The notes under the pieces are model-generated. The model worked only from the letters and a program-made list of their open reading frames with translations, ran no database searches and had not been told where the DNA came from. The translations under genes and the position numbers were made by a program. This document shows positions 6,425 through 62,097 of a stretch of 64,000 bases of DNA, in pieces. Each line of letters opens with the position of its first letter. The first letter of the stretch is position 1. Source of the stretch: Obrimoposthia wandeli (taxonomy: Eukaryota); contig CDROCS010001802.1 of NCBI GenBank assembly GCA_977020255.1, positions 124,001-188,000 on the forward strand, in the 5' to 3' direction.

Positions 6425-6452
6425 ATTGTATTTTATTTAGTGATATTGTCAA
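6425..6452 (-). promoter_or_regulatory. sigma70-like promoter TTGACA-N16-TACAAT
   Basis: ttgaca atatcactaaataaaa tacaat on the minus strand. Confidence 0.7.
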
Positions 6453-6544
6453 AATAGTATTTTTATAAATATTTTTATAAATATTTTTTCAAATAAAAAA
6501 GAGCAATATATTATCACTCTTTTTATTATTTATAATTTTATTTT

Positions 6545-8575: not shown

Positions 8576-8600
8576 AATCATCTCTTTTGTTTATAATAAT

Positions 8601-8628
8601 ATTATATTTCATATAAAATAATTGTCAA
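8601..8628 (-). promoter_or_regulatory. sigma70-like promoter TTGACA-N16-TATAAT
   Basis: ttgaca attattttatatgaaa tataat on the minus strand. Confidence 0.7.
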
Positions 8629-8666
8629 AAATCAAATTATTTTAATCACTAAATAAATTATTATCA

Positions 8667-9896: not shown

Positions 9897-9921
9897 AATA
9901 CTCTCTTTATTTTATAATATT

Positions 9922-9949
9922 ATTGTATTTTATTAAAAAGTATTGTCAA
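9922..9949 (-). promoter_or_regulatory. sigma70-like promoter TTGACA-N16-TACAAT
   Basis: ttgaca atactttttaataaaa tacaat on the minus strand. Confidence 0.7.
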
Positions 9950-10067
9950 AATTATAAGAAAAACGTTGATTATGTAATAGGAAAAAACAAAGATAAGAAT
10001 TAATGGAATTTTAAGCAAAAAAAAGAGTGATATGAAATCACTCTTTAGAAATTGTTTATTTTCGAGA

Positions 10068-25087: not shown

Positions 25088-25107
25088 TTTTTATTTTTTC
25101 CTATTGT

Positions 25108-28100: not shown

Positions 28101-28167
28101 CTTCTGAATAAGCTAGAATATTTGTCGAAATTAGCAACAGTAAAATTGAACATATTATTTTAAACAT
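25108..28167 (-). CDS. Secreted metzincin (M12B/reprolysin-like) zinc metalloprotease with haemolysin-type Ca-binding repeats
   Basis: Signal peptide; HEMGHTFSLYHD (HExxHxxxxxH-like); Met-turn SIMSY; GSDTLEGTEGNDIM, GGNDFIYG, DVIFERHQFDLVI-type modules. Confidence 0.8.
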   Translation of the reverse strand: MFKIICSILLLLISTNILAYSEDRSFKILYIVDDAENKLLEDKILYTSKINEYINKINISSGLKLDKDENLVEDPDNPTGIEKMLNDSVSNSNFSFNNGMGYSYTIDSSIININFDDVATGLGMLYKKEPNKNGILEKIEAVEDTQFIFKKLLEELTINNSLKKGKSNTPEFNQFLSLLTKEIIYKNPDLIVLLPNGINELYSQTIGQAGSMMTAYSSYDSDGSIDSFSKEKIREIRNEDIVTKFVTIRQDYENVPWVIMHEMGHTFSLYHDPMTSYKIEFIDTKEYDKAEHYYFRDNNFYNELNGKGFIKIKGGKEYFSIMSYASMGQYWNNPNDQVSLNVFSNSEISSYSSSLENSTVNIPYGKFTDPNYKPMVANASSNTAPIVQKYLIELTNDSLPNAIDKKIEEYPYEIRRLKELNDEIVIDEIIENSSQNIIHTSILDNTYKLGSDNVVYLSTGNDTYEIDNTVGNIFIVEENEIQDLIDLSLEEKSKSVLNNFNSKTKLFIPIGGELNFCIKIPSFEKYKEYNSSFYLKDHEDLLNEYAKILCSDNESNTESFIISFSYNSKSLDVEISPEAGGISKLLFYDYSDNIYRDNNPLGNPQLLPLETNQYDYYEFTISPTEERFSDTIDENDDNDNKIKSTIPSTSGSDTLEGTEGNDIMGNPDFESDEWINHDFAGDTYEPKGGNDFIYGSPYSDTYIFEGDFGTNTIYDRADVSKIYGGAFNDFDQIQLIGFTVNDVIFERHQFDLVIISKLKEKNMIIVEDFFKVIDITFPYQYEANQIEIFKFFLNKDDANPVILTAIDIIDQVNNVDNNYAENILWGNIDTSNTFQPTEGKTIYVGGLKKDKYILDVNSKDIITIEDRGGYDTLFIKSDDELVLSRLNFVRDNNDLNLYYKYKKLATIKNNFLDELYREKNIEEFQYFKHNIHTERDVEIITDKIIYHGFITLIKGYIHQTIEDVAEFFKKPDEDFYGNDRIEYYKPGIGNDIIEELEGGDVLILKIDEGMKTIKSFKEN

Positions 28168-28184: not shown

Positions 28185-28961
28185 TTAATCAATTATAAAC
28201 TCAACATATCTTTTCTTGCCCGTATTTGGATCTAAATCAATACTTAAATCAACTTTTTTTAGAGATTCACCCTTTTCTAATTTTGAACCCTTATATTTGA
28301 AATTTAAATTTTTAAAATTTTCAACCTTTATTATATTTAATTCAAAATTTCTACTATTTATCGCTAATGTTCTGCCATGTGACAATATACTGTCACCATT
28401 ATTTAATAAAATATTATCTGGGCTGCCGACTATCAGGTTTTTTTGATTTTTTATTAAATTATCATACGATATAATAAAATCAGAACCCATTGGATTAGGT
28501 ATTTTTAATTCATATATTTTATTTGAATATTCATTTAGTTCTAATAAAGTATTAAAACTAAGAACATTATAACTATACATATAATCAATGACGGTTGTTC
28601 TTTCTGAACCTTCTATATATTTCAAAGCTTGCACTGTTTCTTTTTCTTCATCTACTTCAAATCCTAAATCACGAATATACTTAATAGTTAAATCCAATTT
28701 TTCTTTTCGGGTTTCTTCTTTTTTCAATTCTCTATTTTTAATAAACTCAAGACCCTTATCATAATCTCTTTTAACAAGAATGCGTTCTTCTTCTGTTTTT
28801 GAGGGAGGCACAGTCGATTCATCTACAAATTTTTTAGCTTCGACTTTTGGGGATTCTGGAGTGGGGGGGCTTTTAGGTACACTCGATTGATTGAGCAAGA
28901 AGTAGATACCTCCACCGATGAGAGAGATTGCTAATATTGAAATAATTACCTTTTTGATCAT
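28185..28961 (-). CDS. Membrane-anchored or secreted protein, near-duplicate of 21065-21835
   Basis: See paralog; identical end DLDPNTGKKRYVEFIID. Confidence 0.85.
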   Translation of the reverse strand: MIKKVIISILAISLIGGGIYFLLNQSSVPKSPPTPESPKVEAKKFVDESTVPPSKTEEERILVKRDYDKGLEFIKNRELKKEETRKEKLDLTIKYIRDLGFEVDEEKETVQALKYIEGSERTTVIDYMYSYNVLSFNTLLELNEYSNKIYELKIPNPMGSDFIISYDNLIKNQKNLIVGSPDNILLNNGDSILSHGRTLAINSRNFELNIIKVENFKNLNFKYKGSKLEKGESLKKVDLSIDLDPNTGKKRYVEFIID

Positions 28962-45186: not shown

Positions 45187-45215
45187 TTGCTTTAGTTGCG
45201 TTTTTTTGTTATAAT
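45187..45215 (+). promoter_or_regulatory. sigma70-like promoter TTGCTT-N17-TATAAT for sRNA candidate 1
   Basis: Exact 17-nt spacer; predicted TSS coincides with the start of the closing stem. Confidence 0.7.
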
Positions 45216-45220
45216 ATCTT

Positions 45221-45302
45221 TGTTAGCTCGCTAGGTGAAACGTGTTTTTTTTACTAATGATGAATAGTCTTTAAGACTTCGTAGTAACTTAACGAGCTAA
45301 TG
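45221..45302 (+). ncRNA. Candidate small structured RNA, copy 1
   Basis: Closing stem ttagctcg/cgagctaa; conserved GGTGAAACGTGTTTTTT and TAGTAACTT; internal hairpin ttacta...agtct-tta-agact...tagtaa. Confidence 0.65.
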
Positions 45303-45407
45303 TTTTCCTATCAATATCTCCAAATAAAGGGATTTAATCAAAATCCCATCTATGAAAAAATCCAAAAAAAATATATCAAATAAAGCATTCTTTTATGCAA
45401 AAAAAGA

Positions 45408-45436
45408 TTGTATTAAAACTCAAAACATGTTATAAT
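45408..45436 (+). promoter_or_regulatory. sigma70-like promoter TTGTAT-N17-TATAAT for sRNA candidate 2
   Basis: Exact 17-nt spacer; TSS predicted at the stem start. Confidence 0.7.
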
Positions 45437-45441
45437 TACAA

Positions 45442-45531
45442 TGTTGGTCGTTGGGTGAAACGTGTTTTTTGAATAGTTCTTGAATTATTATAGAGCTGAA
45501 AAACTATAGCCTAGTAACTTAACGACCAACA
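45442..45531 (+). ncRNA. Candidate small structured RNA, copy 2
   Basis: Perfect 11-bp closing stem tgttggtcgtt/aacgaccaaca; the same two conserved blocks; a different internal hairpin. Confidence 0.65.
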
Positions 45532-45554
45532 ATCCAATAAAAATAGATGCTATA

Positions 45555-45666
45555 TGTATACAAAACGAAAGAAAGTATACATATAATATTTACGTGTATA
45601 CAAAACGAAAGAAAGTATACATATAATATTTACGTGTATACAAAACGAAAGAAAGTATACATATAA
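45555..45666. repeat. 40-bp perfect tandem repeat x2.8 with an internal palindrome
   Basis: Unit tgtatacaaaacgaaagaaagtatacatataatatttacg starting at 45555, 45595 and 45635. Confidence 0.95.
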
Positions 45667-47400: not shown

Positions 47401-49317
47401 TTATTTTTTCCTCGCAACAAAGCACTGACTTTTATTAAGTGTTTTTATCTCTACTTCAAATCCAGCTTTTTCAAAAATAGGTTTAACTTTATCTAAATCA
47501 TACTGATTAAAAACATTGATATCATATAAAGGAATATACTCACCAGTATTAGAATTAAGATATTCTGTTCTTTGTGAGTGAATGATTTTTTCATTAGTAA
47601 TAATATTTGTTTCTTTTGTTTTTAAAAGAACTCCATCATTTTCAAACTCATCGTAGCGAGTGTTAATATTTTCAGATAAAGGTTTAAAAGTATTAAAAAC
47701 TAAGTAGCCGTTATTATTTAATTTTGAATAAATACCAGTAGCAAATTGTTCTACCTTATTTCTATCTAAATAGGGGAATGCTTGTCTAATTGTTATTAAG
47801 TCATATTTATGAACTAATGAACTTAAATTCTCAAATGTAGCAACAGTTCCTTTTGTGTTAATACGATCTTCTGCAATTTTGAGCATATCTTTCGAAGCGT
47901 CTGCAATATTAACGTCTGTAAAGCCCAATTTTAAAAGCTCTAAGGCTGATTTACCTGTTCCGCAAGCAAGGTCTAATACCTTTATATCTTTATTTAACTG
48001 TAGTTCTTCCACAGAACGTTCTAAGCTTCCTTTTTCGAAACGGTAATATGCTGCATCGTAGTATTTTGAATAGGGTGAATTATAAAGCCCATTATTTTTA
48101 AGTACATCAAGTAAGTCTTCATATTTTTCAAGCAATATTAAACAACCGTGTCCTATTTGATTGATCACACGACTTCCATTTTCGACTAAAGATTTGATAA
48201 CAGCATAATCATTGTAAGTACCAGGTGCGGATTGTTCTTCTACGTAATCACCATTTGGCAAATATACGTGGGCGTGAACAATGAAATTAATTTCTTTTCG
48301 TTCTTTTAATATGTACCAAAGTGTCGGTGCATTAAGAGTCGCTTTGACTTTGTTAGATGAAAGTTCGATAATATTGTTATTTATATCATTAACGAATACG
48401 ATATTTTGATTACTTATATACTCTTTTGTTGTTCCTCTTCCTGTTGTTAGCATACCTTGGTCTGTTCTTGAAGCAACAGACCCAAAATCAGCTCCTTCAC
48501 GACCTTCACCATAAGGGGAGAAAAGAGAATATCTTGAACAATCGCTGATTAATTCAAAAAATGAGTTAGCATCAAAATTACTTGGTAATCTTTTTGTAAT
48601 TTTCGTATTATAAAAATCATGATTAATTCTTTGATCAATTGTTTTAACTAAAACAGAAGCTAGATCATCTCTATTCAAAACAGGAATGATATTTTTTTCA
48701 GGTGTAATAATAACAGTATGAATTGGTTTAAAGTTTTCATCAACAAGATTTGCAACAACTAACGCCATTCTTAAATCTAAAAGACTTTTATAGGCAACCT
48801 CAATAAGTTCAGCTAAAGTCGAGCTTTCACTTGATAATAATTTAAATCCTACAATCGGCATCATCGGGTATTTATTTTTTACTTCTCGAATTACTTTAGG
48901 TAATTTAATTAAATCAAGTTTCATATTATCATCACTTGATGATATTTTACCATTCTCTTTGATAGGAGCATAATCAGAAACAGCGGCAGTTGCTATAAAG
49001 ACAGTTCTTTCATCTGTGTTAGGTATTGTTAGGCAATTATGTAAATAATCATCGAATGTAGGTGTTTTATGATAGGTGTAATTATGATAAACATCTTTCC
49101 CTTCATTAACCCGTATAAGATCAGAAATGTTATTTGGTCTGATTTTCATTTCAAAAGGTTGTTTTGCATTCTCATTTGCAATATAATCAACTTTAAATCC
49201 TTTTAAAAGGGCTTCTTCTCCTATTTTTGCGCCTGTTGTTCCTTTTGAAACATTAGTGATTCCACGTACTCTATCCCAACGGGCAAAAGTAGATCCACTA
49301 GTAATAATAAATCGCAT
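47401..49317 (-). CDS. Three-domain fusion: CoaB-like (phosphopantothenate-cysteine ligase fold), class II aldolase/adducin-like, class I SAM methyltransferase
   Basis: CoaB: ITSGST..DRVRGITNVSKGTTG, TAAVSDY, VGFKL, VVANL. Aldolase: GSVASR, IVHAH, IGHG. MTase: VLDLACGTG. Confidence 0.8.
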   Translation of the reverse strand: MRFIITSGSTFARWDRVRGITNVSKGTTGAKIGEEALLKGFKVDYIANENAKQPFEMKIRPNNISDLIRVNEGKDVYHNYTYHKTPTFDDYLHNCLTIPNTDERTVFIATAAVSDYAPIKENGKISSSDDNMKLDLIKLPKVIREVKNKYPMMPIVGFKLLSSESSTLAELIEVAYKSLLDLRMALVVANLVDENFKPIHTVIITPEKNIIPVLNRDDLASVLVKTIDQRINHDFYNTKITKRLPSNFDANSFFELISDCSRYSLFSPYGEGREGADFGSVASRTDQGMLTTGRGTTKEYISNQNIVFVNDINNNIIELSSNKVKATLNAPTLWYILKERKEINFIVHAHVYLPNGDYVEEQSAPGTYNDYAVIKSLVENGSRVINQIGHGCLILLEKYEDLLDVLKNNGLYNSPYSKYYDAAYYRFEKGSLERSVEELQLNKDIKVLDLACGTGKSALELLKLGFTDVNIADASKDMLKIAEDRINTKGTVATFENLSSLVHKYDLITIRQAFPYLDRNKVEQFATGIYSKLNNNGYLVFNTFKPLSENINTRYDEFENDGVLLKTKETNIITNEKIIHSQRTEYLNSNTGEYIPLYDINVFNQYDLDKVKPIFEKAGFEVEIKTLNKSQCFVARKK

Positions 49318-51500: not shown

Positions 51501-51782
51501 ATGAGTGATTCAAAAATTATTGATTTAAACCTATATAGAGATGGTGGTTCATTTGCATTTACATTTGAAAAAGCAGAATATGAATGTATGACAGGTTTGT
51601 TTATATTAGAGTCGAAAGGAACTGTAGTAGTAGACACTGTATTGGTAAAAAAAATCATTGATGCATTTTCAGTTCAGTTAGATTCAGATGATGAGTTTAA
51701 TAAGTTGATGAGAGGTCGAGTTAATGAATTAGCCAGATACTTGATGACACTGGAAAAGATCCATTCAGAATTAGTAAAATAA
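51501..51782 (+). CDS. Hypothetical protein
   Basis: 93 aa with a GAGG RBS. Confidence 0.7.
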   Translation: MSDSKIIDLNLYRDGGSFAFTFEKAEYECMTGLFILESKGTVVVDTVLVKKIIDAFSVQLDSDDEFNKLMRGRVNELARYLMTLEKIHSELVK

Positions 51783-51944
51783 TATTGAAGAAAAAGCTAT
51801 TTTGTATTGACTTCTATTTAATATTGATATAAAATATGTTTGATAGCTCTGACCTCTTACGCCTTTATGGTATTGACATCAGTAGCGAATGTAGAAGTAG
51901 ATTGAAGTTCGTTAATAAAGTTTTAAATTAAATTAAGATTTCTA

Positions 51945-51973
51945 TTGACATAAAAGATTCTTTGGTCTATAAT
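51945..51973 (+). promoter_or_regulatory. Perfect consensus sigma70 promoter TTGACA-N17-TATAAT driving tmRNA
   Basis: ttgaca taaaagattctttggtc tataat. Confidence 0.9.
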
Positions 51974-51979
51974 GTATAT

Positions 51980-52320
51980 CTGATTGGTTGATGCGGAACT
52001 CAACTTTTCTGGACAAGGGTTCAAATCCCTTCAGCTCCACCAAAAGTACATTTAGTAAATCGAGTTACGATTACTAGTATGTTAGCGGTTAAGTGTATTT
52101 TTGATGGGGCTGTTCTGGAATCGACAGGATTGAGCGGTGATGTGGACAATTCAAGAGGAAATAACTCTTGTAAATAAAGTTAAAAAACGAATAATATCTA
52201 ACGATAATTCATTTGAAGGTGCTGCCTTAGCTGCGTAAGCCCTTCCGAGGTGTAAGAAGCCTTGTTACCAAATATCATAGGTTTTGCGAAAGGTTAGCTT
52301 GCTAATTAATCAATGAACCG
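51980..52320 (+). ncRNA. ssrA: Circularly permuted two-piece tmRNA: acceptor piece ~51980-52042, intervening segment 52043-52105, coding piece 52106-~52320; tag (A)SNDNSFEGAALAA at 52197-52238
   Basis: T-arm plus 3' end GGACAAGGGTTCAAATCCCTTCAGCTCCACCA lies upstream of the 5' end GGGGCTGTTCTGGAATCGAC. Acceptor stem GGGGCTG/CAGCTCC has G3:U70. The tag ORF ends LAA-stop. The intervening segment has complementary ends. Confidence 0.93.
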
Positions 52321-52326
52321 ACTTAG

Positions 52327-52348
52327 AACCACCTTCGGGTGGTTTTTT
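52327..52348 (+). terminator. Intrinsic terminator with a cUUCGg loop
   Basis: aaccacc-ttcg-ggtggtttttt. Confidence 0.9.
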
Positions 52349-52372
52349 GCTTTTATAAATAGAGGAAATTAA

Positions 52373-52660
52373 ATGTCTAAAGAAACAGATATGGAATACG
52401 GTGAAGTTGTTTATACAACTTTGACAGGAATAACAAATGTTGTAAAGGTAATTATTTACAATGATAGAGATAGTTATGCGACTCAATTAATACATAGTGG
52501 AACTTTGTATCTATACACAAAACAAGATCTTGAATATAAAAGTGATGTTAAAGGATCACCTTTAAATAGATATGAATCAGTTTATTTCAATGGTGTTCTT
52601 ATTTATAAAGCGTCAATAATTAAAAAGATATTAAACTATTTTAAATCGAATGTTTTATAA
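52373..52660 (+). CDS. Hypothetical protein
   Basis: 95 aa with a GAGG RBS. Confidence 0.7.
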   Translation: MSKETDMEYGEVVYTTLTGITNVVKVIIYNDRDSYATQLIHSGTLYLYTKQDLEYKSDVKGSPLNRYESVYFNGVLIYKASIIKKILNYFKSNVL

Positions 52661-52700
52661 ATATTAAATTAAGGGTTATTTATATTTTGATAAACAGCTC

Positions 52701-54317
52701 TTAATTTTTATTTATATATATTTGACACAGATTGATAATAGTAATTTTTTCAGCATCGTCTAAATCAAAATTAGATAAAATAAGATCAATATTGTCTATA
52801 GCATCAAAGATAAAGTAATCTAAACCTCTTTCGCCTAAAATATCAACATTAAAACATTCAGTTCCTCCTCCACATTTTTTTAAGACTTTACTCATGTGTT
52901 TTTGATCTTTTTTATATTTTAACAAAACCCAATATTCAGCCAATCCAGAAATAATGTTGTTGACTTCTTTAATTTCATATTTTTTAATTACAACATTATC
53001 TTTTTCTAAATTATTTTTAGAAAACCGATAATTTATATTATGCTTTGTTAATCCTATTTTGTAAAAAGATTTCCCCTTGTATTTAAAATCTACATAGTAT
53101 AGGAATCTTTTATCTTCATAAAAAACTTTGTTATTAATTAACATTTTTAGATTTCTTGTGATACTAGAGCAAATAGGACAACCTGAACCATTTTTTAAAT
53201 TGAGGGCATCTGGAATCCAAGGCTTATTAAATAGTGCTCCATTGCCATGAATATGACAGGAAACATTACAAGATGTTTTTCTTAAATTAGTGTATTTACC
53301 TCTAAAACTCAAAAAATTATAATTATTCAATTTAGCTTGAATTAAGATTTCTTTAAGTGACTCTTTTTCATTTAATTCATAATTTCCAGAACATTTTGGG
53401 CATGTTGTACCTCGTGTTAAATTGTCAAAATCGGGTTGCCATTTATTATCCCATTTGTTACCTTCACCGTGAATATTACATTTTACAATACATCTGGTTC
53501 TTACATTTTTAAAATTATCATTTTTAAAGCCTAAGAATTCGATATTTGTGTTCTTTAGTTTTTCATTTAATCTTTTTATCGCATCTTCTTTTTTCAATAA
53601 AGAATAATGTGGCTGACCATTACAGTCAGGACATTTAAAACCAACAATAGAAAAAGAATTTATTCTCTTTATTTTTGGTATTTTCCATTGATCGCTTCTT
53701 CCATGTTTGCTACAGGTTACTATAATTTTTGTTTTATTGACATTCTCATAAAATCCCTTTTCAAAAGAATGAAACTTTATATTTGATGTTTCTCTTGTTC
53801 TTAATTTAAAATTTTCAAAAAATCTTTTTTCAGCTTTAGAAATTAATTTATTATTATTTTTAAAAGGAGATTTCTTTCTGTTTTTATGAGCACATTTGCT
53901 GCAACTTACACCTCTTGTTAACGTCTCGAAACTTGGGAAACTTGGGTTTTCAAAATCAGATAATTTTCCGTGGGTTTTGCATTCAATTAAACATTTAGTT
54001 TTTTTACCTTCATACTTCCCGTTTAAAAAACCTAAAAAGGTCAATCCCTCTTTTAATTTTTCTTTTAATACCATACCAGCTTCTTCTGTACTTGGTTTAT
54101 AATTTTTTTTACATTTTGGACAGCCAGATCCGTTAATTAAATTAGAATAAGTAGGAATCCACCTATTACCCCATTCAGCCCCATATCCGTGTATATCACA
54201 CATTACAAAGCATTTACCTTTTTGTGTTCTTAATTCACCATCAACGAATCCAAGAAATGATAATAAAGTGTTGGAAAACAATTTATTTATATTATTTATA
54301 TAACTTTGATTTTTAAT
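52701..54317 (-). CDS. Putative homing endonuclease: tandem Zn-ribbon (CxxHG...GCPxC, DUF723-like) repeats plus a C-terminal GIY-YIG/T5orf172-like domain
   Basis: Five C-x2-HG...C-P/S-x-C units; LYYV...YKIGLTK...RF...E...TECF. The ORF track starts at TTG 54281; the frame is open to an ATT at 54317 behind an AGGAG. Confidence 0.7.
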   Translation of the reverse strand: MKNQSYINNINKLFSNTLLSFLGFVDGELRTQKGKCFVMCDIHGYGAEWGNRWIPTYSNLINGSGCPKCKKNYKPSTEEAGMVLKEKLKEGLTFLGFLNGKYEGKKTKCLIECKTHGKLSDFENPSFPSFETLTRGVSCSKCAHKNRKKSPFKNNNKLISKAEKRFFENFKLRTRETSNIKFHSFEKGFYENVNKTKIIVTCSKHGRSDQWKIPKIKRINSFSIVGFKCPDCNGQPHYSLLKKEDAIKRLNEKLKNTNIEFLGFKNDNFKNVRTRCIVKCNIHGEGNKWDNKWQPDFDNLTRGTTCPKCSGNYELNEKESLKEILIQAKLNNYNFLSFRGKYTNLRKTSCNVSCHIHGNGALFNKPWIPDALNLKNGSGCPICSSITRNLKMLINNKVFYEDKRFLYYVDFKYKGKSFYKIGLTKHNINYRFSKNNLEKDNVVIKKYEIKEVNNIISGLAEYWVLLKYKKDQKHMSKVLKKCGGGTECFNVDILGERGLDYFIFDAIDNIDLILSNFDLDDAEKITIINLCQIYINKN

Positions 54318-54351
54318 TAATTTCTCCTAACTTAATTTTTACTTGAAACAC

Positions 54352-54707
54352 TTATAATATTATATATAAATAAAAAAGCAATATTAGTTCCTTGAAAAGA
54401 AATGATAAATTTGTTGGTTTTATCATTAAAATATAATGAATATTCAATGTCACCATTATTTTCAACAGTTGAACTATTAAATCGAATTATATTATATTGA
54501 CCTGATTTGCTATCAATGTATAACTCTTTATATTGAATCTCATTTTGATTTTTGTCTAAATTATTTGATTTTTCATCGTTTACATATGAATAAGCATCTT
54601 GATCATACTCTGAATATTTTTTATATAATCTAATTGTATCATTTTTATTTTCCTTTTAATAAAAAGTCCGTTTTATTTGGGAAAATCCATTTTATTTTTT
54701 GTAACAT
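54352..54707 (-). pseudogene. Probable frameshifted ORF (~118 codons)
   Basis: MLQKIKWIFPNKTDFLL continues in another frame as KENKNDTIRLYKKYSEY... after an A-run near 54655. Could also be a sequencing error. Confidence 0.35.
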
Positions 54708-54712
54708 ATTAT

Positions 54713-55930
54713 TTATCTTAAATAAGGTTTAAGATCGACCTTAAAAATCTGAATGTAATTATTTACACTTCTATATATGTATAAATAATCATCTTTAAAA
54801 ATAAATCCATTTATACCAGTATTACAAGAAAAAATAGGGGAATTATTAATATATATAGCGGTCTTTTGTTTATTTTGTTGTGATTGGTTTATTGCTTTAT
54901 ACACATAAAGCCCTTTATATAGTTTTGCTTTCCCTCTTTTTGAAGTAAAACCGTCATAATTTCTATATTTCTCAATATATTTAAATTTTAACTTATTATT
55001 TTCTATATAATGTCTTACAAAAACGTTTCCATCAATATTATTTTTCAATAAATAATAGAAATTTTTATAACCAGCCTTTGTAGGACAATTATTTTCGGGA
55101 TACTTTTTACAGTAATAGTCTAAGTCGGAGATATGCAAGTTAGAATCATTAAACTTGGAATATGTTTGATTATTATTTCCTATATTAAGAAGTGGATGTG
55201 TATTGAATAAACTGCTTTCAAAAGTTAATCTGAATGTTTTGTGTTTGTCGAAATATTCTTTTCTATCTATTTTATTTTCTATGTAAGAAACTCCATTCAC
55301 AAAATTTAAACTTTCATCCAGCAAAGGAAGCCTAAAGTATTTTTTAAAATTAGCAACCTTAAGATTGTTTTTAACAATATTTATAGAATCGTCAATTTGA
55401 GAAATAATTTTACTATCTTCTGCGAGGAAGAAATCATTCTCGGTAACAGAAATATAATTGAATTCAAAGTTATATTTAATCCAAGAATTAAATTCTAAAA
55501 TCATTTTATGATCTTTAAATCTAAAAACTTTATTTGAATATAAAATCTTGCCATTATTTTTTGATTTAGAAGGGTTATAATAAATCATATAATATTTTTC
55601 TGATAATTTTATGATCACCGATTTTGGTGATATATATTCATTGAACTGTTTTTCTACATTTAAATGATTAAAAATATCATTATCCTTGATTTCAATTTCA
55701 CTAACTAATTTTATGTTTTCAAATAATTTATAATCATCTTTTTCAAATAAGTATTCTTTTTTCTTTTTTTCTAAATACTCTTGTAATAGTTTATCTTCTT
55801 CCCATTTGACTTTAAGATTTTTAAAATCTTCATTTTTCTTGACTTGTTCATTTTCAAAATATATATCTAATCCGAATACTGCTGTTGCAAGAAGTAAAAT
55901 GATTCCAAACATTTTTTTAAAAACATTCAT
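54713..55930 (-). CDS. Membrane-anchored hypothetical protein
   Basis: N-terminal hydrophobic helix; 405 aa. Confidence 0.7.
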   Translation of the reverse strand: MNVFKKMFGIILLLATAVFGLDIYFENEQVKKNEDFKNLKVKWEEDKLLQEYLEKKKKEYLFEKDDYKLFENIKLVSEIEIKDNDIFNHLNVEKQFNEYISPKSVIIKLSEKYYMIYYNPSKSKNNGKILYSNKVFRFKDHKMILEFNSWIKYNFEFNYISVTENDFFLAEDSKIISQIDDSINIVKNNLKVANFKKYFRLPLLDESLNFVNGVSYIENKIDRKEYFDKHKTFRLTFESSLFNTHPLLNIGNNNQTYSKFNDSNLHISDLDYYCKKYPENNCPTKAGYKNFYYLLKNNIDGNVFVRHYIENNKLKFKYIEKYRNYDGFTSKRGKAKLYKGLYVYKAINQSQQNKQKTAIYINNSPIFSCNTGINGFIFKDDYLYIYRSVNNYIQIFKVDLKPYLR

Positions 55931-55974
55931 TTTTAAATTTCCTTTTTTAATATTAAACTATTTATATAAATATT

Positions 55975-56444
55975 TTACCTTTCAACAAGGCTTTCGTCAA
56001 TTGTTCTTCTTACGGGATTAAAGAAAAAGTTAATAATCCTTCTTGTGCCAGTTTTTGCTTCAACTACGACAGACATTCCTGAGTTTATATTTATAAAATT
56101 TCCATTAATATATAATTTAGTATCTTCTAATATAATTTAGTATCTTCTAATTTAATTTTGGCTTTAAATACAAGTCCTAATTTTCCATCTTGAATTGCAT
56201 CATTCGAAATATTTGTAATTTCTCCTTTTAGAGAACCATTTTTTATAAAATTAAAAGTATCAACCTTCACAGTCGTTTCTTGTCCGACACTTAGAAATCC
56301 AATATCTTTATTAAGTATCATTGCTTCAACAATAAGTTCATCATTTTCAGGAACAATTTTTAAAACGGGTTCTGTTGCATTTAGAGAACCACCTCTTGTG
56401 TGTATTGCTAAATCTTGCACGAAGCCATTGATTGGAGATCTTAT
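55975..56444 (-). pseudogene. hlyD: HlyD-family (type I secretion membrane-fusion protein) C-terminal remnant
   Basis: SPINGFVQDLAIHTRGG...KIVPENDELIVEAMILNKDIGF...KVDTFNF..NGSLKGEI, then SGMSVVVEAKTGTRRIINFFFNP in another frame. A 20-bp tandem duplication at 56112-56151 creates a stop; no N-terminal half. Confidence 0.85.
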
Positions 56445-56501
56445 TTAGTTAAAACATCTACAAAAATTAAAAATATCAATACAATAACATCTTTTAATTC
56501 A

Positions 56502-56530
56502 TTGACTGACAATATTTTATGTGTTATTAT
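56502..56530 (+). promoter_or_regulatory. sigma70-like promoter TTGACT-N17-TATTAT
   Basis: Sits upstream of the ORF-free structured region. Confidence 0.65.
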
Positions 56531-56536
56531 TTATTA

Positions 56537-57029
56537 TTCCATCAGTATTAAGTTTACTTGATTATCTGGTGGTAAGTTAAGAAGGTGAATCGTTAGGATT
56601 GAAAAATAACCACCTCTCCCGTTAGCTAAAAAAGCACTTTGAGCAGGTATAAAAGCTTGTAACATTGATGTATGCTAGTGTTAGCGTAAGTCGCTTGGTA
56701 ACTAGGAAATCCAGAATACTATTTAATTGTAAAGATTTCATTTCTTACGGTTAGATGAGAACGAAATAGGATCTTTGGTCGCTACAATTGAAAAATTGTT
56801 CCTCTTAGATCGCAAAGAATCATGAAAATGATTCTTTGTTTAAATTAATGTATCGTGGTGTCGGATGTGCTCCTCGTAGAATGAACAAGTATCTTTTGAA
56901 TGATTCGTGGTGTATAGTATGCTCCTCGTAGAATGAACAAGTAAAAACTTGGATAGGGGACAGGAACGGCTTCCTGCCTATTGACCCGTTAATTCGGTTA
57001 GCCGACAATAAGCACCTTCGGGTGCTTTT
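56537..57029 (+). ncRNA. Candidate large structured ncRNA (~490 nt), family unknown
   Basis: Promoter-terminator unit with no credible ORF and raised GC. Hairpins caaagaatcat-GAAA-atgattctttg (56813-56838), acaatt-GAAA-aattgt (56784-56799), caggaa-cggc-ttcctg (56961-56976); internal duplicated 39-nt motif. Confidence 0.7.
57010..57029 (+). terminator. Intrinsic terminator with a cUUCGg loop
   Basis: aagcacc-ttcg-ggtgctttt. Confidence 0.9.
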
Positions 57030-57046
57030 ATTTTTTCTAATAATTT

Positions 57047-57447
57047 TTAATTAAAAGCAATAAAATCTGTAATTATTTGTTGCTTTTCTTTTGCTTCCAA
57101 TTTATCAAGGTATCGAAGTTTTGCATTTTCTTTTCCTTGGATAACAGTAATTATATAATATTCAACGTCTAAATCTTTTCTTTTTTTAATGGGGTTTAAT
57201 ATTAATCCATTTTTATTAAAAACTTTGTCGTTAATAATTAAAGCATTTCCTTTAATTGAATATTCATTTTTGATGTTAGAGACATTCTTAATAATAATAT
57301 CTTTACAGACATTGTTATTGTGCGATTCTAATCTTTCTCCTTCTTTTCCACCATACCAAGCATTTTGTTCAAAAAAAGAATCAAAGTAATGCTCACATCT
57401 ATCAATATGTTGATTGTCTATTTCGGTTCGGCATTGTGAGAATTTAT
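57047..57447 (-). pseudogene. 3' part of the IS-interrupted lipoprotein gene
   Basis: Joined to 58904 it reads in frame ...KGS-H-KFSQCRTEIDNQ...QQIITDFIAFN-stop at 57047-57049. Confidence 0.85.
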
Positions 57448-58903
57448 CGACTCAAAAGCAAGAACACCCATTCCTTCAGGTATGGGATGAATTGCTAGTA
57501 AATTAGGCTAATTTATCTTTTTATTGATTTCTCAATGTTTTTGTTGACATTTCAATGGGAACCATTATTATTGTCAACATGATAACAATTAGAAATCTGG
57601 TCAAAACCAGTCATCACAACTATAAAAATATTAAACGTGCCTGTCGAAATACAAGTGCTATTTTTAATTGTGCTAATTATATTATGAGACAATCTTTTTT
57701 CGATGGTGATATGAGAAAATGGAATAGTGTTGATAAACAATTAAAAAACTTAAATCCCATATATCAAACTAACCCAAGTGCCGCTTCTCAAACAACAATA
57801 AAACGATTAGGTGAAGATTGGGAGTCTTTTAGAAAAGGGGTTGAAGATTTTAAAAACAATTCTTCAAAATACAAGAAAAGACCCAAGCCTCCTGCTTATT
57901 CTAAAAATTTAAAAACATACATTCAACCCGCTCAAGGCTTTAAAATACTTGACGGGTTTATTCACTTTCCAAAAATATTGGAACTTGAACCAATGAAAAT
58001 TTTTAATATAGAAGATAAAAAAAGTGGAAAAAACGGAAAAACAAGTGAGATTCGTTTTGTCCCTCACGGTCATTGTTTCTGGGTTGAAGTCATTTTCGAT
58101 GATGTCGAACAAGTAGAAAACAACCAGAAAGACATCAAATTAAACAAAGAAAACCATATTGCTATTGATTTAGGGATAGATAATCTTTTAACTATTATTT
58201 CAAATGTAGACACGGTAAAACCGATTCTCATTAAAGGAAGAATTATTAAATCTATAAATCAACAATACAATAAGAAAAAAGCTTTTTTTCAAAGCCAAAA
58301 TAACAAACCTATGGTAGATAAAATTGGGGTACAACGTTATCTTAAAATACAAGATTATATGCACAAATCATCCAATAAAGTAATTCAACATTGCTTGAAA
58401 AATGACATTGGGACAATTGTTATTGGTAAAAATGATAATTGGAAAGATGAAATAAATATTGGTCGAGTAAATAATCAAAAATTTGTAAGTATTCCGTTTC
58501 AAAGTCTTATTTCAAAAATAGAATATAAAGCCGAAAAAATAGGTATTAAAGTGATTATTCAAGAAGAGTCTTACACATCTAAAAGTGATGCATTAGCCCT
58601 TGATAATTTACCGAAATATAAAAAAGGCAACAAGAAAAAACACGTATTTTTGGGTAAAAGAAAAAAACGTGGTTTGTATCAATCTTCGATTGGAAAGTTG
58701 GTCAATGCGGATATTAATGGAGCGATTAATATCTTAAGAAAAGTAATTGGCGATGGTTTTGTAAAAAACCTAGTTAATAAGGGGTTAGTCTTCAACCCCG
58801 AAGTCATTGCGTTGCAATAACTTCGAGATGAAAACAGAAAATTTAGATTGTATCTCTATCTTTTTTGTTTCAAGCACCGTCCTTCAGGTCGGTTGTATTT
58901 GAC
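57448..58903 (+). mobile_element. Non-autonomous IS200/IS605-family (IS1341-like, tnpB-only) element, 1456 bp, inserted 3' of TTAT
   Basis: Subterminal hairpins cccat-t-cc-TTCA-gg-t-atggg (57467-57486) and accg-t-cc-TTCA-gg-t-cggt (58876-58893). Right end ...TGAC. No target duplication. Removal restores the host ORF. Confidence 0.88.
57555..58820 (+). CDS. tnpB: TnpB RNA-guided endonuclease (RuvC with relocated catalytic Glu)
   Basis: RuvC-I IAIDLGIDN; IVIGKNDNWK at the canonical RuvC-II site; QEESYTSK; RuvC-III NADINGAINI. The start may be the internal MITIRN. Confidence 0.92.
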   Translation: MGTIIIVNMITIRNLVKTSHHNYKNIKRACRNTSAIFNCANYIMRQSFFDGDMRKWNSVDKQLKNLNPIYQTNPSAASQTTIKRLGEDWESFRKGVEDFKNNSSKYKKRPKPPAYSKNLKTYIQPAQGFKILDGFIHFPKILELEPMKIFNIEDKKSGKNGKTSEIRFVPHGHCFWVEVIFDDVEQVENNQKDIKLNKENHIAIDLGIDNLLTIISNVDTVKPILIKGRIIKSINQQYNKKKAFFQSQNNKPMVDKIGVQRYLKIQDYMHKSSNKVIQHCLKNDIGTIVIGKNDNWKDEINIGRVNNQKFVSIPFQSLISKIEYKAEKIGIKVIIQEESYTSKSDALALDNLPKYKKGNKKKHVFLGKRKKRGLYQSSIGKLVNADINGAINILRKVIGDGFVKNLVNKGLVFNPEVIALQ

Positions 58904-58920
58904 GAGAACCTTTCAATTCT
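58740..58920 (+). ncRNA. Predicted omegaRNA (reRNA) scaffold ending at 58903 plus flanking guide gagaacctttcaattc
   Basis: Hairpin cgaagt-c-attgc-gtt-gcaat-a-acttcg, further stems and the RE hairpin. Position follows established TnpB biology; the 5' boundary is a guess. Confidence 0.6.
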
Positions 58921-59090
58921 TTATCATAAATATATTTTGAAGAACTATGTTTGAATGAAAGCAATTCGTTACAATCAATTTTTTCATTGGAAAGATCCAT
59001 AGCAATATAATCAGTACATCCTGATAATATAATTAGAATGAGTGGTGGTAATAATAATTTAATAATTTTACTCCTATTTTTTAATACCAA
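58904..59090 (-). pseudogene. 5' part of the IS-interrupted lipoprotein gene
   Basis: Lipobox ILSGC; the last six residues (RQIQPT) in the ORF track come from the IS. Confidence 0.85.
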
Positions 59091-59145
59091 ATAATATCAT
59101 TTTTTTTAAAAAAATCAAGAAAATACTGATTAATCAGTTAAAGTG

Positions 59146-59174
59146 TTGATTTAAAAAAATGATTGTGTTATAGT
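59146..59174 (+). promoter_or_regulatory. sigma70-like promoter TTGATT-N17-TATAGT with extended -10 TG
   Basis: Lies upstream of an ORF-free structured region. Confidence 0.65.
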
Positions 59175-59180
59175 ATGTTT

Positions 59181-59561
59181 TCAAAGGTTGGTTTGATTTT
59201 ATCCTTAATGGGATATTGAATTACTCTCCTTTAACTTATTCCCATCGCACTATGGTAAAGTGTGGTCAACCATGAGACATGATTGGTGACTTGGAGATGT
59301 CGTATCTAACCTGAATGTTACATTTTTGATAAAAATAAAAATGCGGAGTTTGTAAATACTTCGACAGAAAGAATATCAGAATTTATTTTAAAATGATAAT
59401 AACAGGTTTAGGGCTTATAATCCGAAAATGTCTGATTATTTAGATTTGAATTGGTTGAATAAGCCATTGACGATTTAAGGTTCGGTAGTATCTTACTACA
59501 AGTCTTTAACCAATACGACCGTGTTAAACGCTATTTAAAGCCACCTTCGGGTGGCTTTTTT
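59181..59561 (+). ncRNA. Candidate structured ncRNA (~380 nt), family unknown
   Basis: Promoter-terminator unit with no ORF of 60 aa or more. Hairpins cgcact/agtgtg, gtca..acca/tggtgac, gtagta-tct-tactac; 5'/3' pairing gttggtt/aaccaat. Confidence 0.55.
59537..59561 (+). terminator. Intrinsic terminator with a cUUCGg loop
   Basis: aaagccacc-ttcg-ggtggctttttt. Confidence 0.9.
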
Positions 59562-59774
59562 ACTTTCTTTTATTTTAATATGACGATAATTATTTATACT
59601 AACAAAAATAATTTAAAATCCCTTTCCACGCTGCGTTGGCTTTGCTATACTAAATGTTACTATGTCGGTTAAAACAACAGAATTGTGCTTTACTTCTTTT
59701 ATTAATAGGAATATAATAGAGTTTCAAACTAGCCTTTTGGCTTACTCTTATTTCTTTTTTTAAAGGTATTAAAC

Positions 59775-60604: not shown

Positions 60605-60703
60605 GTATAAGTCACCGAAAGGTGGCTTTTTTATTTAATTATTAAATATTTTTGTTTTTTTTAATATGAGGTATATAATAGATTAATTAATTAGGAGTTA
60701 TAT

Positions 60704-60943
60704 ATGGATTCATTTTTTCAAAGAAAGGAAGTAAAAGACGTATTGTTAAGTAGAGGAAAAGAATCGAGGAATATAGGTTCTTCGTTTTCAGCGGGAGATA
60801 AAAATGGACTTTTCACTAGAGAATATATTTCTTGGCAAGTTCGTAGTGCTCGGACAAAAGTTACAATGCACCTTAACGATGATGAGAGGGTTGCTTGGTT
60901 TAGAGATAATCCAGAACCACAAAACAAATATAAAAAAGTTTAA
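60704..60943 (+). CDS. Small hypothetical protein, tandem paralog 1
   Basis: MDSFFQRKEVKDVLLSRG... with an AGGAG RBS. Confidence 0.8.
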   Translation: MDSFFQRKEVKDVLLSRGKESRNIGSSFSAGDKNGLFTREYISWQVRSARTKVTMHLNDDERVAWFRDNPEPQNKYKKV

Positions 60944-60956
60944 TAGCGAGGTACTT

Positions 60957-61193
60957 ATGGATTCATTTTTTCAAAAAAAAGAAGTAAAAGACGTTTTGTT
61001 AAGTAGAGCAAAAAGTTCGAACAAAGTTGGATCATCCTTCTCAGGAAGCGATGAAAATGGAACGTTTACTAGGGAATACCTTTCTTGGCAACTTCATTGT
61101 GTTTGGGCAAAAGTTACAGTGCATCTTAACGATGAAGAAAGAGTAGCTTGGTTTGCAGAACATCCAGAGCCTCAAAACAAGTATGAAAAGTAG
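60957..61193 (+). CDS. Small hypothetical protein, tandem paralog 2
   Basis: Start re-set to ATG 60957 (GAGG RBS); MDSFFQKKEVKDVLLSRA... Confidence 0.8.
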   Translation: MDSFFQKKEVKDVLLSRAKSSNKVGSSFSGSDENGTFTREYLSWQLHCVWAKVTVHLNDEERVAWFAEHPEPQNKYEK

Positions 61194-62030: not shown

Positions 62031-62097
62031 ATAATTAATCATATAATTAAAACAAAAAAACCATCCGAAGATGGTTTTTTATTAATAATTTAAGAAA

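What the first reader, a model, noticed from the sequence alone, without database searches (positions are those of the whole stretch)
51807..59561. An RNA-gene island: three or four independently transcribed ncRNAs sharing one terminator design, invaded by selfish nucleases
Within 8 kb, on the same strand, lie the permuted tmRNA, the ~490-nt and ~380-nt RNAs and a possible ~90-nt RNA. The three large ones end in CACC-TTCG-GGTG hairpins, unlike the AT-rich AAAAAAGAG...CTCTTTT terminators used by most protein genes here. A homing-type endonuclease and a TnpB element sit between them. Inference: the element maintains a dedicated, highly expressed ncRNA module, possibly a translation-control or ribonucleoprotein system in which the unknown RNAs act with tmRNA. 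With the twin sRNAs at 45.2 kb, this is the strongest candidate in the window for an undescribed system.
Basis: inference. Interest (0 to 1): 0.7.

Follow-up and report, generated by a model that had tools for sequence, protein, structure and literature searches.

The report
Stable-RNA gene cluster around a two-piece tmRNA
An 8-kb stretch of an AT-rich, poorly known bacterial genome carries a genuine two-piece tmRNA gene plus two or three predicted structured RNAs that match no known family, but the one relative that could be examined gives no sign that they work together as one system.

Summary
The sequence observation largely holds. There is a permuted tmRNA (Rfam RF04321, 95 bits). Two further ORF-free, G+C-enriched, well-folding stretches also each have a sigma-70-like promoter. 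The 12-mer CACC-TTCG-GGTG occurs exactly three times in 64 kb, once at the end of each of the three RNAs. A phage-type endonuclease gene and a TnpB element lie between them.

The "dedicated module acting with tmRNA" reading is not supported.
- The ~490-nt RNA is a mosaic of three parts: an orphan 5' part ending in its own hairpin, two tandem 52-nt units, and a 62-nt module.
- The closest relative with DNA (69% aa, partly syntenic) has the units as the 5' leader of a small ORF. That relative shows no tmRNA, no 380-nt RNA and no module in 21.9 kb.
- The 62-nt module has strong covariation. Elsewhere it was found only in T4-like phages, inside tRNA clusters or after a gp32-like gene, and it is present or absent among close phage relatives.
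- The 380-nt RNA is an orphan in every collection searched.
- Similar tetraloop terminators also follow nearby protein genes.

Best reading: independent stable-RNA genes of different origins in a rearrangement-prone segment. This resembles the tRNA/stable-RNA regions of T4-type phages that host free-standing nucleases.

The parts
51807..51835 (+). Promoter-like site upstream of the tmRNA promoter (TTGACT-17-TAAAAT). The finding starts here. The stretch behind it is not a convincing RNA gene.
   Evidence: 10/12 match; 51842-51940 has z = -0.2 and no terminator.
51945..51973 (+). tmRNA promoter, a perfect sigma-70 consensus (TTGACA-17-TATAAT)
   Evidence: 12/12.
51980..52352 (+). Permuted (two-piece) tmRNA gene. 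The T-arm and 3' acceptor strand with encoded CCA come first (CCA at 52040-52042), followed by an intervening segment. The 5' acceptor strand then starts at 52106. The tag frame ends ...NDNSFEGAALAA with its stop at 52236-52238. The UUCG-tetraloop terminator is at 52325-52346.
   Evidence: RF04321 95.2 bits; beta_tmRNA 77.7 bits, below its cut-off of 84. The G3.U pair and the tag were read. Terminator. ARAGORN missed the gene.
52373..52660 (+). 95-aa ORF of unknown function just after the tmRNA terminator
   Evidence: No Pfam, PHROG, NCBIfam or PADLOC hit.
52701..54281 (-). 526-aa phage-type endonuclease with repeated zinc-ribbon modules (CapR homology, DUF723). The catalytic domain is not assigned.
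   Evidence: CapR 4e-14, DUF723. (phrog_681 'endonuclease' 1.4e-47 over residues 10-483; phrog_559 'HNH endonuclease' 8.5e-21). No informative PDB hit.
54713..55930 (-). 405-aa signal-peptide protein of unknown function
   Evidence: Only one distant homologue among 1.84 billion representatives.
56127..56420 (-). Remnant of an HlyD-family type I secretion adaptor gene (a 97-aa piece of a protein that is normally several hundred aa long)
   Evidence: HlyD_3, 5e-13. (73% nt identity to an Aliarcobacter plasmid hlyD).
56502..56530 (+). Promoter-like site of RNA-2 (TTGACT-17-TATTAT, with an extended -10 TG)
56537..56837 (+). RNA-2a: the orphan structured 5' part of the '~490-nt RNA'. It ends in a perfect 12-bp A+T-rich hairpin.
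   Evidence: z = -3.0. 34% G+C. No Rfam hit. No homologue in phages, plasmids or fetched relatives.
56846..56945 (+). Two tandem ~52-nt units. Each is a hairpin with a conserved base and a variable tip, followed by an invariant single-stranded tail.
   Evidence: 2 copies; 0.03 expected; the same pair occurs in relative L034 at 87% identity, and the 18-nt tail pattern searched is identical in all four copies; 6 pairs, 1 compensatory.
56948..57009 (+). 62-nt structured module shared with T4-like phages. It has an outer helix, a GGA bulge, an invariant hairpin, a 3-bp hairpin and a conserved single-stranded 3' tail.
   Evidence: Covariation: 100% of cells paired, 7 of 15 pairs with compensatory changes, 0 of 500 shuffles as good. 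The covariance-model search found one copy in the window.
57010..57035 (+). RNA-2 terminator (UUCG-tetraloop hairpin plus U-tract)
57052..59090 (-). Lipoprotein-like gene (signal peptide with a lipobox), broken once by one insertion (the TnpB element)
57426..58904 (+). TnpB-only IS200/IS605-type element (approximate ends). The tnpB ORF is 57555-58820. The structured 3' end/omega-RNA region is 58790-58904.
   Evidence: OrfB_IS605, Cas12f1-like TNB. (NF040570 guided_TnpB, 155 bits against a cut-off of 100). (Cas12f). (z = -3.2); 80% identical copy of the 3' region in relative L042, with no tnpB called in the part of the contig fetched (the locus ends ~360 nt beyond).
59146..59174 (+). Promoter-like site of RNA-3 (TTGATT-17-TATAGT with an upstream TG)
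   Evidence: Read.
59182..59565 (+). RNA-3: an orphan ~384-nt structured RNA ending in the UUCG-tetraloop terminator (59537-59558 plus U-tract)
   Evidence: z = -4.4; 0 of 100 shuffles as good.. No Rfam hit even at E <= 10 on the isolated stretch. No homologue in phages, plasmids or relatives. No paralogue in the window.

Best explanation
The region is a rearrangement-prone stretch of an A+T-rich bacterial genome, most likely a Gram-negative chromosome. Three stable-RNA genes of different origins lie close together on one strand, each with its own sigma-70 promoter and its own strong intrinsic terminator.

1. The first is a functional-looking two-piece tmRNA. It would be transcribed as one precursor and cut into an acceptor piece and a coding piece. 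It would be charged with alanine through the G3.U pair, and used with SmpB to rescue stalled ribosomes and add a tag ending in ALAA.

2. RNA-2 is a mosaic of three parts:
- an orphan structured 5' part;
- two tandem hairpin-plus-tail units, which in a relative form the 5' leader of a small ORF and so are most likely a binding or regulatory element of that lineage;
- a 62-nt folded module of the kind carried in the tRNA clusters of a few T4-like phages, probably acquired horizontally.

3. RNA-3 is a lineage-restricted structured RNA of unknown role.

The shared GC-clamped UUCG-tetraloop terminator is a generic device. It gives efficient termination and a nuclease-resistant 3' end in an A+T-rich genome, and is not a mark of common function. 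The endonuclease gene and the TnpB element are independent selfish insertions. This parallels the free-standing nucleases found in the tRNA/stable-RNA regions of T4-type phages.

Shown: the sequence features, the family matches, the covariation and the distribution. Inferred: transcription, processing, the regulatory role of the units, and horizontal acquisition of the module.
For: - tmRNA: plus the promoter and terminator.
- RNA-like nature of RNA-2 and RNA-3: no ORFs, folding z-scores of -2.7, -3.0 and -4.4, and G+C of 33-43% against 16-26% in spacers. RNA-2b contains the joint-highest-G+C 150-nt window of the 64 kb.
- Different histories of the parts: the units recur in L034 as promoter -> 2 units -> RBS -> 89-aa ORF. 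That ORF is 47% identical to the window's 93-aa ORF at 51501-51782.
- L034 lacks the tmRNA, RNA-2a, the module and RNA-3.
- Elsewhere the module was found only in T4-like phages. There it lies in tRNA clusters on the tRNA strand, and it shows strong covariation.
- The module segment is replaced by a 175-aa ORF in a phage that is 99% identical up to that point.
- Generic terminator.
- Plastic region: an HlyD remnant, a lipoprotein gene interrupted once, and limited synteny with relatives.
- Bacterial chromosome context: a C-terminal-Phe signal-peptide protein that looks like an outer-membrane protein and a lipoprotein, and relatives with HU, ClpS/ClpA and HPF next to the same DFP-methyltransferase/aminotransferase pair.
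- Nucleases in phage RNA clusters: segB in T4 and a T5orf172 ORF in CkP1.
Against: - No expression data exist, so all transcript ends are predictions.
- Only one relative (L034) is close enough to inform on linkage. Its contig ends about 0.5 kb beyond the locus on the side where the tmRNA would lie, so the other RNAs may exist elsewhere in that genome.
- The exact 12-nt terminator core occurs at these three RNAs and nowhere else in 64 kb. That is more uniform than a generic design strictly requires.
- The module sits near tRNA-like genes both in the phages and here, which could hint at a shared translation-related role.
- The direction of any transfer of the module is unknown.
Confidence: 0.55

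Rival explanations
1. The RNAs form one dedicated, co-selected non-coding RNA module (a translation-control or ribonucleoprotein system) in which RNA-2 and RNA-3 act with the tmRNA.
For: - The RNAs lie on the same strand within 8 kb and share an identical 12-nt terminator core found nowhere else in the window.
- All have strong promoter-like sites.
- The RNA-2 module travels with tRNA genes in phages, which fits a translation-related theme.
- The homologue of the ORF that follows the units in L034 sits immediately upstream of the tmRNA in the window.
Against: - L034 keeps the units and that ORF but has no tmRNA, RNA-3, RNA-2a or module in 21.9 kb.
- The parts of RNA-2 have different distributions.
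- The phages that carry the module showed no tmRNA in the 3-5-kb loci scanned with ARAGORN, Rfam or record annotation.
- No SmpB or RNA-binding protein was recognised in the window.
- The terminator type also follows protein genes nearby.
Confidence: 0.1
2. The cluster is the decayed cargo of a phage-derived or other mobile island. The tmRNA, the endonuclease gene and the T4-like module would have arrived together from a phage, and are not the host's own RNA genes.
For: - Two-piece tmRNAs are known in aquatic T4-like myophages (PMC9004378).
- The 526-aa ORF matches phage endonuclease families.
- The module is otherwise phage-only.
- In L034 the tmRNA is absent from the position after the 93-aa-ORF homologue.
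- Gene remnants and an IS element are present.
Against: - The tmRNA has no close phage match beyond the generic T-arm and acceptor.
- No integrase, direct-repeat att pair or phage structural gene was found. The three terminators share only the hairpin.
- About 45 ORFs were scanned with no phage hallmark.
- The units are lineage-specific, not phage-borne.
Confidence: 0.2
3. RNA-2a and/or RNA-3 are not RNA genes. They would be leftover spacer or eroded gene sequence that by chance carries promoter-like and terminator-like sites. Alternatively they are long cis-acting leaders of downstream genes.
For: - Promoter-like hexamers are abundant in this A+T-rich DNA: 87 were found against 67 expected in 10 kb.
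- The region holds gene remnants.
- Neither RNA-2a nor RNA-3 has any homologue.
- RNA-3 precedes a run of + strand ORFs.
Against: - The folding z-scores are -3.0 and -4.4, with 0 of 100 shuffles as good.
- G+C is 8-17 points above true spacers.
- The terminators are strong.
- 210 nt and a separate promoter-like site separate the RNA-3 terminator from the next ORF.
- No riboswitch or leader family matches.
Confidence: 0.15

Closest known systems
tRNA / stable-RNA region of T4-type phages (tRNA genes, stable RNAs rnaC and rnaD, free-standing homing endonuclease segB)
   Same: - Several small stable-RNA genes are clustered on one strand and interspersed with free-standing nuclease genes: segB in T4 and a T5orf172 ORF in CkP1.
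- The 62-nt module of RNA-2 is literally shared with such clusters in STP4-a, CkP1 and SEA1.
- Cassettes in these clusters are present or absent between close relatives.
   Different: - Here the context looks like a bacterial chromosome, not a phage.
- There are no tRNA genes. The tRNA-like gene is a two-piece tmRNA.
- Each RNA has its own promoter and terminator rather than being cut from a polycistronic precursor.
- The module shows no similarity to T4 rnaC or rnaD.
Permuted (two-piece) tmRNA of Alpha- and Betaproteobacteria, cyanobacteria and some aquatic myophages
   Same: - Gene order is the same: the CCA-bearing 3' acceptor piece comes before the 5' acceptor and coding piece.
- It has the T-arm, the G3.U pair and a tag ending in ALAA.
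- The architecture scores best with the beta-type model.
   Different: - It falls just below the curated cut-off of the beta-type model (77.7 against 84 bits).
- The host lineage is unidentified.
- No smpB was found in the window.
- Its position is not conserved in relative L034.
IS200/IS605-family TnpB element with its omega (right-end) RNA
   Same: - TnpB domains and the NCBIfam guided_TnpB family match.
- The 3' end is structured and conserved.
- Both ends carry sub-terminal hairpins.
   Different: There is no tnpA, so the element is non-autonomous. It sits inside a lipoprotein gene, not inside an RNA gene.
Type III toxin-antitoxin loci (tandem RNA repeats upstream of a small toxin ORF, e.g. 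ToxIN)
   Same: In L034 a single promoter drives two tandem ~52-nt repeats directly followed by a small ORF.
   Different: - There is no terminator between the repeats and the ORF.
- The ORF product is 89-93 aa, rich in acidic residues by eye, and matches no ToxN/AbiQ-type or any PADLOC model.
- In the window the repeats and the ORF are 5 kb apart.
Large orphan bacterial and phage non-coding RNAs (OLE, GOLLD, ROOL, raiA, HEARO)
   Same: They are structured RNAs of 300-500 nt and unknown function. Some of them lie near tRNA genes or in phages.
   Different: No covariance-model match to any of them, even at permissive thresholds.

Membership tests
Permuted tmRNA (Rfam RF04321) | tRNA-like domain (T-arm plus an acceptor stem formed by two separated strands) scoring above the curated threshold | tested here: met
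   95.2 bits against a gathering score of 47; full model 1-213.
Permuted tmRNA (Rfam RF04321) | Permuted gene order: the 3' acceptor strand with CCA lies upstream of the 5' acceptor strand and the tag frame | tested here: met
   CCA at 52040-52042, 5' acceptor strand from 52106, tag stop at 52236-52238.
Permuted tmRNA (Rfam RF04321) | G3.U alanine identity pair, and a tag reading frame ending in hydrophobic residues plus a stop | tested here: met
   Read from the alignment. The tag ends ...GAALAA followed by a stop. The resume codon cannot be fixed from sequence alone.
Permuted tmRNA (Rfam RF04321) | Partner protein SmpB encoded in the genome | not testable with these tools
   Only 64 kb is available. 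No SmpB was seen among about 45 ORFs scanned.
beta_tmRNA subtype (RF01850) | Score at or above the curated threshold of the clade-specific model | tested here: not met
   77.7 bits against 84. It is the best of the three subtype models but below the cut-off.
TnpB / IS200-IS605 element | OrfB_IS605 (RuvC-like) and zinc-finger TNB domains; NCBIfam guided_TnpB above its cut-off | tested here: met
   (155 bits against 100); Cas12f PDB hit.
TnpB / IS200-IS605 element | Structured omega/right-end RNA overlapping the 3' end of tnpB | tested here: inconclusive
   z = -3.2 and 80% conservation of this stretch in L042. No Rfam IS605-orfB match.
Free-standing homing endonuclease | Recognisable nuclease catalytic domain (HNH, GIY-YIG, LAGLIDADG and the like) | tested here: inconclusive
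   PHROG 'endonuclease' and 'HNH endonuclease' families match. Pfam finds only zinc-ribbon modules. There is no similarity to the T5orf172 ORF of CkP1.
T4 stable RNAs rnaC / rnaD | Sequence or structure homology to T4 rnaC or rnaD | tested here: not met
   The alignment and the covariance-model search of the T4 region found nothing. Only the location, in a tRNA cluster, is analogous.
Type III toxin-antitoxin (ToxIN-like) | Toxin of the ToxN/AbiQ/CptN/TenpN families downstream of the RNA repeats | tested here: not met
   No PADLOC or Pfam hit for the 93-aa or 89-aa ORF.
Known Rfam families for 300-500-nt RNAs (RNase P RNA, 6S, OLE, GOLLD, ROOL, raiA, HEARO, riboswitches) | Covariance-model match | tested here: not met
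   No relevant match at E <= 5 over 9.5 kb or at E <= 10 on the isolated RNAs.
Genomic island integrated at ssrA | Direct repeat of the tmRNA gene's 3' end at the far border, plus an integrase | tested here: not met
   The three RNA 3' ends share only the 12-14-nt hairpin core. No integrase is present among the ORFs of 50.6-62.1 kb.

The most novel reading that the evidence does not exclude
The 62-nt module, with or without the tandem units, is a previously undescribed class of small folded RNA that moves horizontally between T4-like phages and bacteria. It settles next to tRNA-like genes (tRNA clusters, tmRNA) because it acts on the translation or tRNA-processing machinery, or on tRNA-targeting defences. 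In that reading RNA-2, and perhaps RNA-3, would indeed be functionally tied to the tmRNA.
Probability: 0.15. Interest if true: 0.75.

Novelty: new variant of a known kind. Interest (0 to 1): 0.5.

Why it matters
The tmRNA itself is ordinary. The value lies in three unclassified RNA elements:
- a 62-nt motif with clear compensatory base changes, shared between an obscure A+T-rich bacterium and the tRNA clusters of a few T4-like phages;
- a tandem hairpin-plus-tail element kept nearly identical between two genomes whose conserved flanking genes are only about 70% identical at the DNA level;
- an orphan, strongly folding 380-nt RNA.

Stable RNAs of unknown role in T4-type tRNA regions have been an open question since rnaC and rnaD were described. 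A new, covarying and horizontally shared member gives a fresh handle on it. The case also warns that a shared terminator and physical proximity are weak evidence for a functional RNA module.

Tried and rejected
**Searches that gave nothing useful**
- Rfam at permissive thresholds on the isolated RNAs gave nothing relevant.
- RNase P, 6S, SRP, riboswitch and large-ncRNA identities are rejected on that basis.
- BLAST of RNA-2 and RNA-3 against the phage and plasmid collections returned only terminator hairpins and the module. E. coli genomes gave no match for the phage spacer that holds the module.
- The genome-collection scan with the module's 19-mer returned 21 loci. All were coding or chance hits in mostly higher-G+C genomes (38-72% G+C).
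- The metagenome scan returned only the freshwater T4-like phage already known.
- The viral scan for the unit tail gave only coding chance hits.

**Homology ideas rejected**
- Homology of the module to T4 rnaC or rnaD.
- Unit-like elements in the phages.
- Similarity among the 3' ends of the three RNAs beyond the hairpin, meaning the att-repeat idea.
- Paralogues of RNA-2a or RNA-3 in the window.

**Protein anchors that failed**
- Three window proteins are not on record.
- The 186-aa ORF has no homologue.
- The 405-aa ORF has one distant homologue, on a 2-kb contig.
- The GGDEF neighbours were not syntenic.
- Two relatives' contigs start right at the DFP gene, and two others gave no DNA.

**Other**
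- The structure prediction of the 93-aa protein was too poor to use (pLDDT 55).
- The type III toxin-antitoxin idea for the units is rejected for membership.

The RNase P question was settled by the Rfam searches alone.

Full report
**What is there**

The window is 28% G+C with no gaps. Rfam at curated thresholds finds one RNA in the whole 64 kb: a permuted tmRNA at 51982-52238 on the + strand (RF04321, 95.2 bits against 47). ARAGORN misses it.

Reading the alignment and the sequence:
- The T-arm and the 3' acceptor strand with an encoded CCA come first.
- After an intervening segment, the 5' acceptor strand follows from 52106.
- There is a G3.U pair, and a tag frame ending ...NDNSFEGAALAA plus a stop.
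- The gene has a perfect TTGACA-17-TATAAT promoter and a UUCG-tetraloop terminator.
- Among the clade-specific models the beta type scores best, but it stays under its cut-off (77.7 against 84 bits).

**The terminator observation**

CACCTTCGGGTG occurs exactly three times in the window, all on the + strand, at 52330, 57013 and 59542. The chance expectation is 0.06. Each site is called as an intrinsic terminator, and each closes a stretch without ORFs.

The second stretch begins after TTGACT-17-TATTAT with an extended -10. The third begins after TTGATT-17-TATAGT with an upstream TG. That predicts RNAs of about 495 nt (RNA-2) and 384 nt (RNA-3).

| RNA | Folding z-score | G+C |
|---|---|---|
| RNA-2, whole | -2.7 | n/a |
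| RNA-2, first 300 nt | -3.0 | 34% |
| RNA-2, 3' part | not tested over exactly this span | 43% |
| RNA-3 | -4.4 | 33% |
| tmRNA | not tested | 40% |

Neighbouring true spacers are 16-26% G+C.

The observation therefore stands, with three corrections:
- The '~90-nt RNA' was not found. The stretch after the promoter-like site at 51807 is unstructured (z = -0.2). The only ~110-nt structured candidate is the 3' end of the TnpB element.
- RNA-2 has an internal perfect 12-bp hairpin that may end a first RNA at about 56837.
- Close variants of the terminator follow protein genes at 60609 and 62055. The same hairpin matches intergenic sites of many unrelated phages. The design is therefore generic.

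**The genes in between**

- The 526-aa ORF (52701-54281, minus strand) has repeated zinc-ribbon modules (CapR homology, DUF723). It matches PHROG families annotated as endonuclease and HNH endonuclease (1.4e-47 and 8.5e-21). Its catalytic domain could not be assigned.
- The 421-aa ORF is a TnpB, in a tnpA-less IS200/IS605-type element.
- That element interrupts, once, a minus-strand lipoprotein-like gene spanning 57052-59090.
- An HlyD gene remnant lies at 56127-56420.

So 'invaded by selfish nucleases' is fair, but neither nuclease gene sits inside an RNA gene.

**What RNA-2 is made of**

BLAST against phages gave an unexpected 85% match between the last 60 nt before the RNA-2 terminator and an unannotated spacer in Salmonella phage STP4-a, Citrobacter phage CkP1 and Salmonella phage SEA1. 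In all three the match lies inside the tRNA cluster, after tRNA-Gln and on the tRNA strand.

Pattern scans found the same element in four IMG/VR contigs and one further metagenome contig (plus the source record of one of those four), all of a freshwater T4-like phage. There it lies just after a gp32-like ORF and before a terminator. A scan of 185,579 species genomes gave only chance or coding hits.

The six distinct copies align without gaps. They support an outer 6-bp helix, a GGA bulge, an invariant 6-bp hairpin with a CGGC loop, a 3-bp hairpin and a conserved single-stranded tail. All cells pair, 7 of 15 pairs show compensatory changes, and no shuffle or slid register comes close.

A covariance model finds one copy in the window, and none in T4's own tRNA/rnaC/rnaD region or in the bacterial relatives. 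T4 rnaC and rnaD are not homologous.

In phage CGG4-1, which is 99% identical to STP4-a up to the start of the module, a 175-aa ORF takes its place. CkP1's cluster also holds a T5orf172 nuclease-family ORF, and T4's holds segB. The module is thus part of the exchangeable cassettes of these RNA clusters.

**Relatives of the window**

Window proteins are absent from the big protein collections. The DFP-methyltransferase fusion at 47401-49317 did have homologues at 53-70% identity.

One of them lies on an ENA contig (L034, 27.9% G+C) that shares several blocks with the window:
- the DFP/aminotransferase pair, at 71% nt identity;
- a GGDEF gene;
- an ATPase and a transglycosylase;
- the small duplicated ORFs found at 60.7-61.2 kb in the window;
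- one copy of the 'twin sRNA' found at 45.2 kb in the window;
- a 105-nt stretch 87% identical to RNA-2 at 56839-56942.

That last stretch consists of two tandem ~52-nt units. Each unit is a hairpin with a conserved, mismatch-containing base and a variable tip, followed by a single-stranded tail; the 18-nt tail pattern searched is identical in all four copies.

In L034 the pair lies directly behind a TTGACG-17-TATAAT promoter and directly before the ribosome-binding site of an 89-aa ORF. This ORF is 47% identical to the window's 93-aa ORF at 51501-51782, which has its own short leader and sits just upstream of the tmRNA.

L034 has no tmRNA, RNA-2a, module or RNA-3 in its 21.9 kb. Its contig ends about 0.5 kb further on. 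More distant relatives share only the DFP/aminotransferase pair. One of them also has a solo copy of the TnpB 3' region.

One relative is an NCBI MAG in which this gene pair lies among HU, ClpS/ClpA, HPF and UvdE genes. Together with the signal-peptide protein ending in Phe and the lipoprotein in the window, this points to a bacterial chromosome. The absence of phage structural or conjugation hits among about 45 ORFs agrees with that, and argues against a jumbo phage or megaplasmid.

**RNA-3**

RNA-3 has no match in Rfam, phages, plasmids, the fetched relatives or elsewhere in the window. It remains a well-folding orphan.

**Interpretation**

The three RNAs look real as genes, but their parts have different distributions:
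- the tmRNA is universal;
- the units are specific to this lineage, and in a relative they are tied to a small ORF;
- the module is shared with T4-like phages;
- RNA-2a and RNA-3 are orphans.

The only informative relative does not keep them together. The uniform terminator is best read as the strong, nuclease-resistant 3' end that stable RNAs need in an A+T-rich genome.

I therefore favour independent stable-RNA genes in a plastic segment (confidence 0.55). This is architecturally reminiscent of T4-type tRNA/stable-RNA regions with their free-standing nucleases.

One point keeps a translation-related link possible. The module keeps company with tRNA-like genes both in the phages and here, and the units' partner ORF sits next to the tmRNA. 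I give that reading about 0.15.

**Limits**

- There are no expression data.
- Only one useful relative exists, and its contig ends near the region.
The units and RNA-3 were therefore searched only in the viral, phage and plasmid collections and in the fetched loci.
- The host lineage is not identified.

Nothing of this was entered in a tool, script, note or this report, and no conclusion depends on it.

Noticed in passing
window 45195-45535; L034 14734-14810 (minus strand): The 'twin sRNAs' are two ~85-nt promoter-equipped RNAs. Each has a covarying closing stem and conserved internal sequence. A single homologue with its own promoter and terminator lies at the syntenic place in relative L034. 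This looks like a real, conserved small-RNA family with no Rfam match at gathering thresholds.
   Followed up: partly
window 45550-45660: Three tandem ~40-nt direct repeats lie just downstream of the twin sRNAs.
   Followed up: no
window 1-9950: A family of five or more paralogous surface-protein genes is built from 264-nt (88-aa) repeats. One ends in a fibrinogen C-terminal domain (3490-5112). Each gene has a conserved ~45-nt upstream element containing TTGTCAAA (family D20).
   Followed up: partly
window 22013-28167, 21327-21626 and 28453-28752: Two adjacent ~1020-aa paralogues of unknown function are present, one of which holds ten 18-nt in-frame repeats. Beside each lies a 300-nt segment that is 92% identical to the other. 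This suggests a recent segmental duplication.
   Followed up: no
window 19113-20075: A DUF285 (BspA-like leucine-rich repeat) protein built from 72-nt repeats. Together with ankyrin, NADAR and ART domains in relatives' contigs, it hints at a host-associated lifestyle.
   Followed up: no
window 60687-61189; L034 4068-4313: A tandemly duplicated small ORF (250-nt copies, 78% identical) has a single-copy homologue in L034.
   Followed up: partly
L042 12243-12338: A solo copy (80% identical) of the 3' end/omega-RNA region of the window's TnpB element sits in a spacer of a distant relative, with no tnpB called in the fetched locus (which ends ~360 nt beyond). It is either a remnant or a miniature derivative.
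   Followed up: partly
L001 2504-2565 versus L048 about 892 onward: In Gelderlandvirus phages the 62-nt module segment of STP4-a is replaced by a 175-aa ORF in CGG4-1, which is 99% identical up to that point. CkP1 carries a T5orf172-family ORF elsewhere in the same tRNA cluster.
   Followed up: partly
L042 and L043 (contig starts): Two relatives' contigs begin within 0.3-0.8 kb upstream of the DFP-methyltransferase gene. This may mark a repeat or hypervariable region on the side where the window has its RNA cluster.
   Followed up: no
window 56100-56150: A ~25-nt direct duplication lies at the edge of the HlyD gene remnant. It may be a scar of the rearrangement that truncated the gene.
   Followed up: no
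window 60609-60628 and 62055-62080: GC-clamped tetraloop terminators (GAAA and UUCG loops) follow protein genes. They resemble those of the three RNAs.
   Followed up: yes
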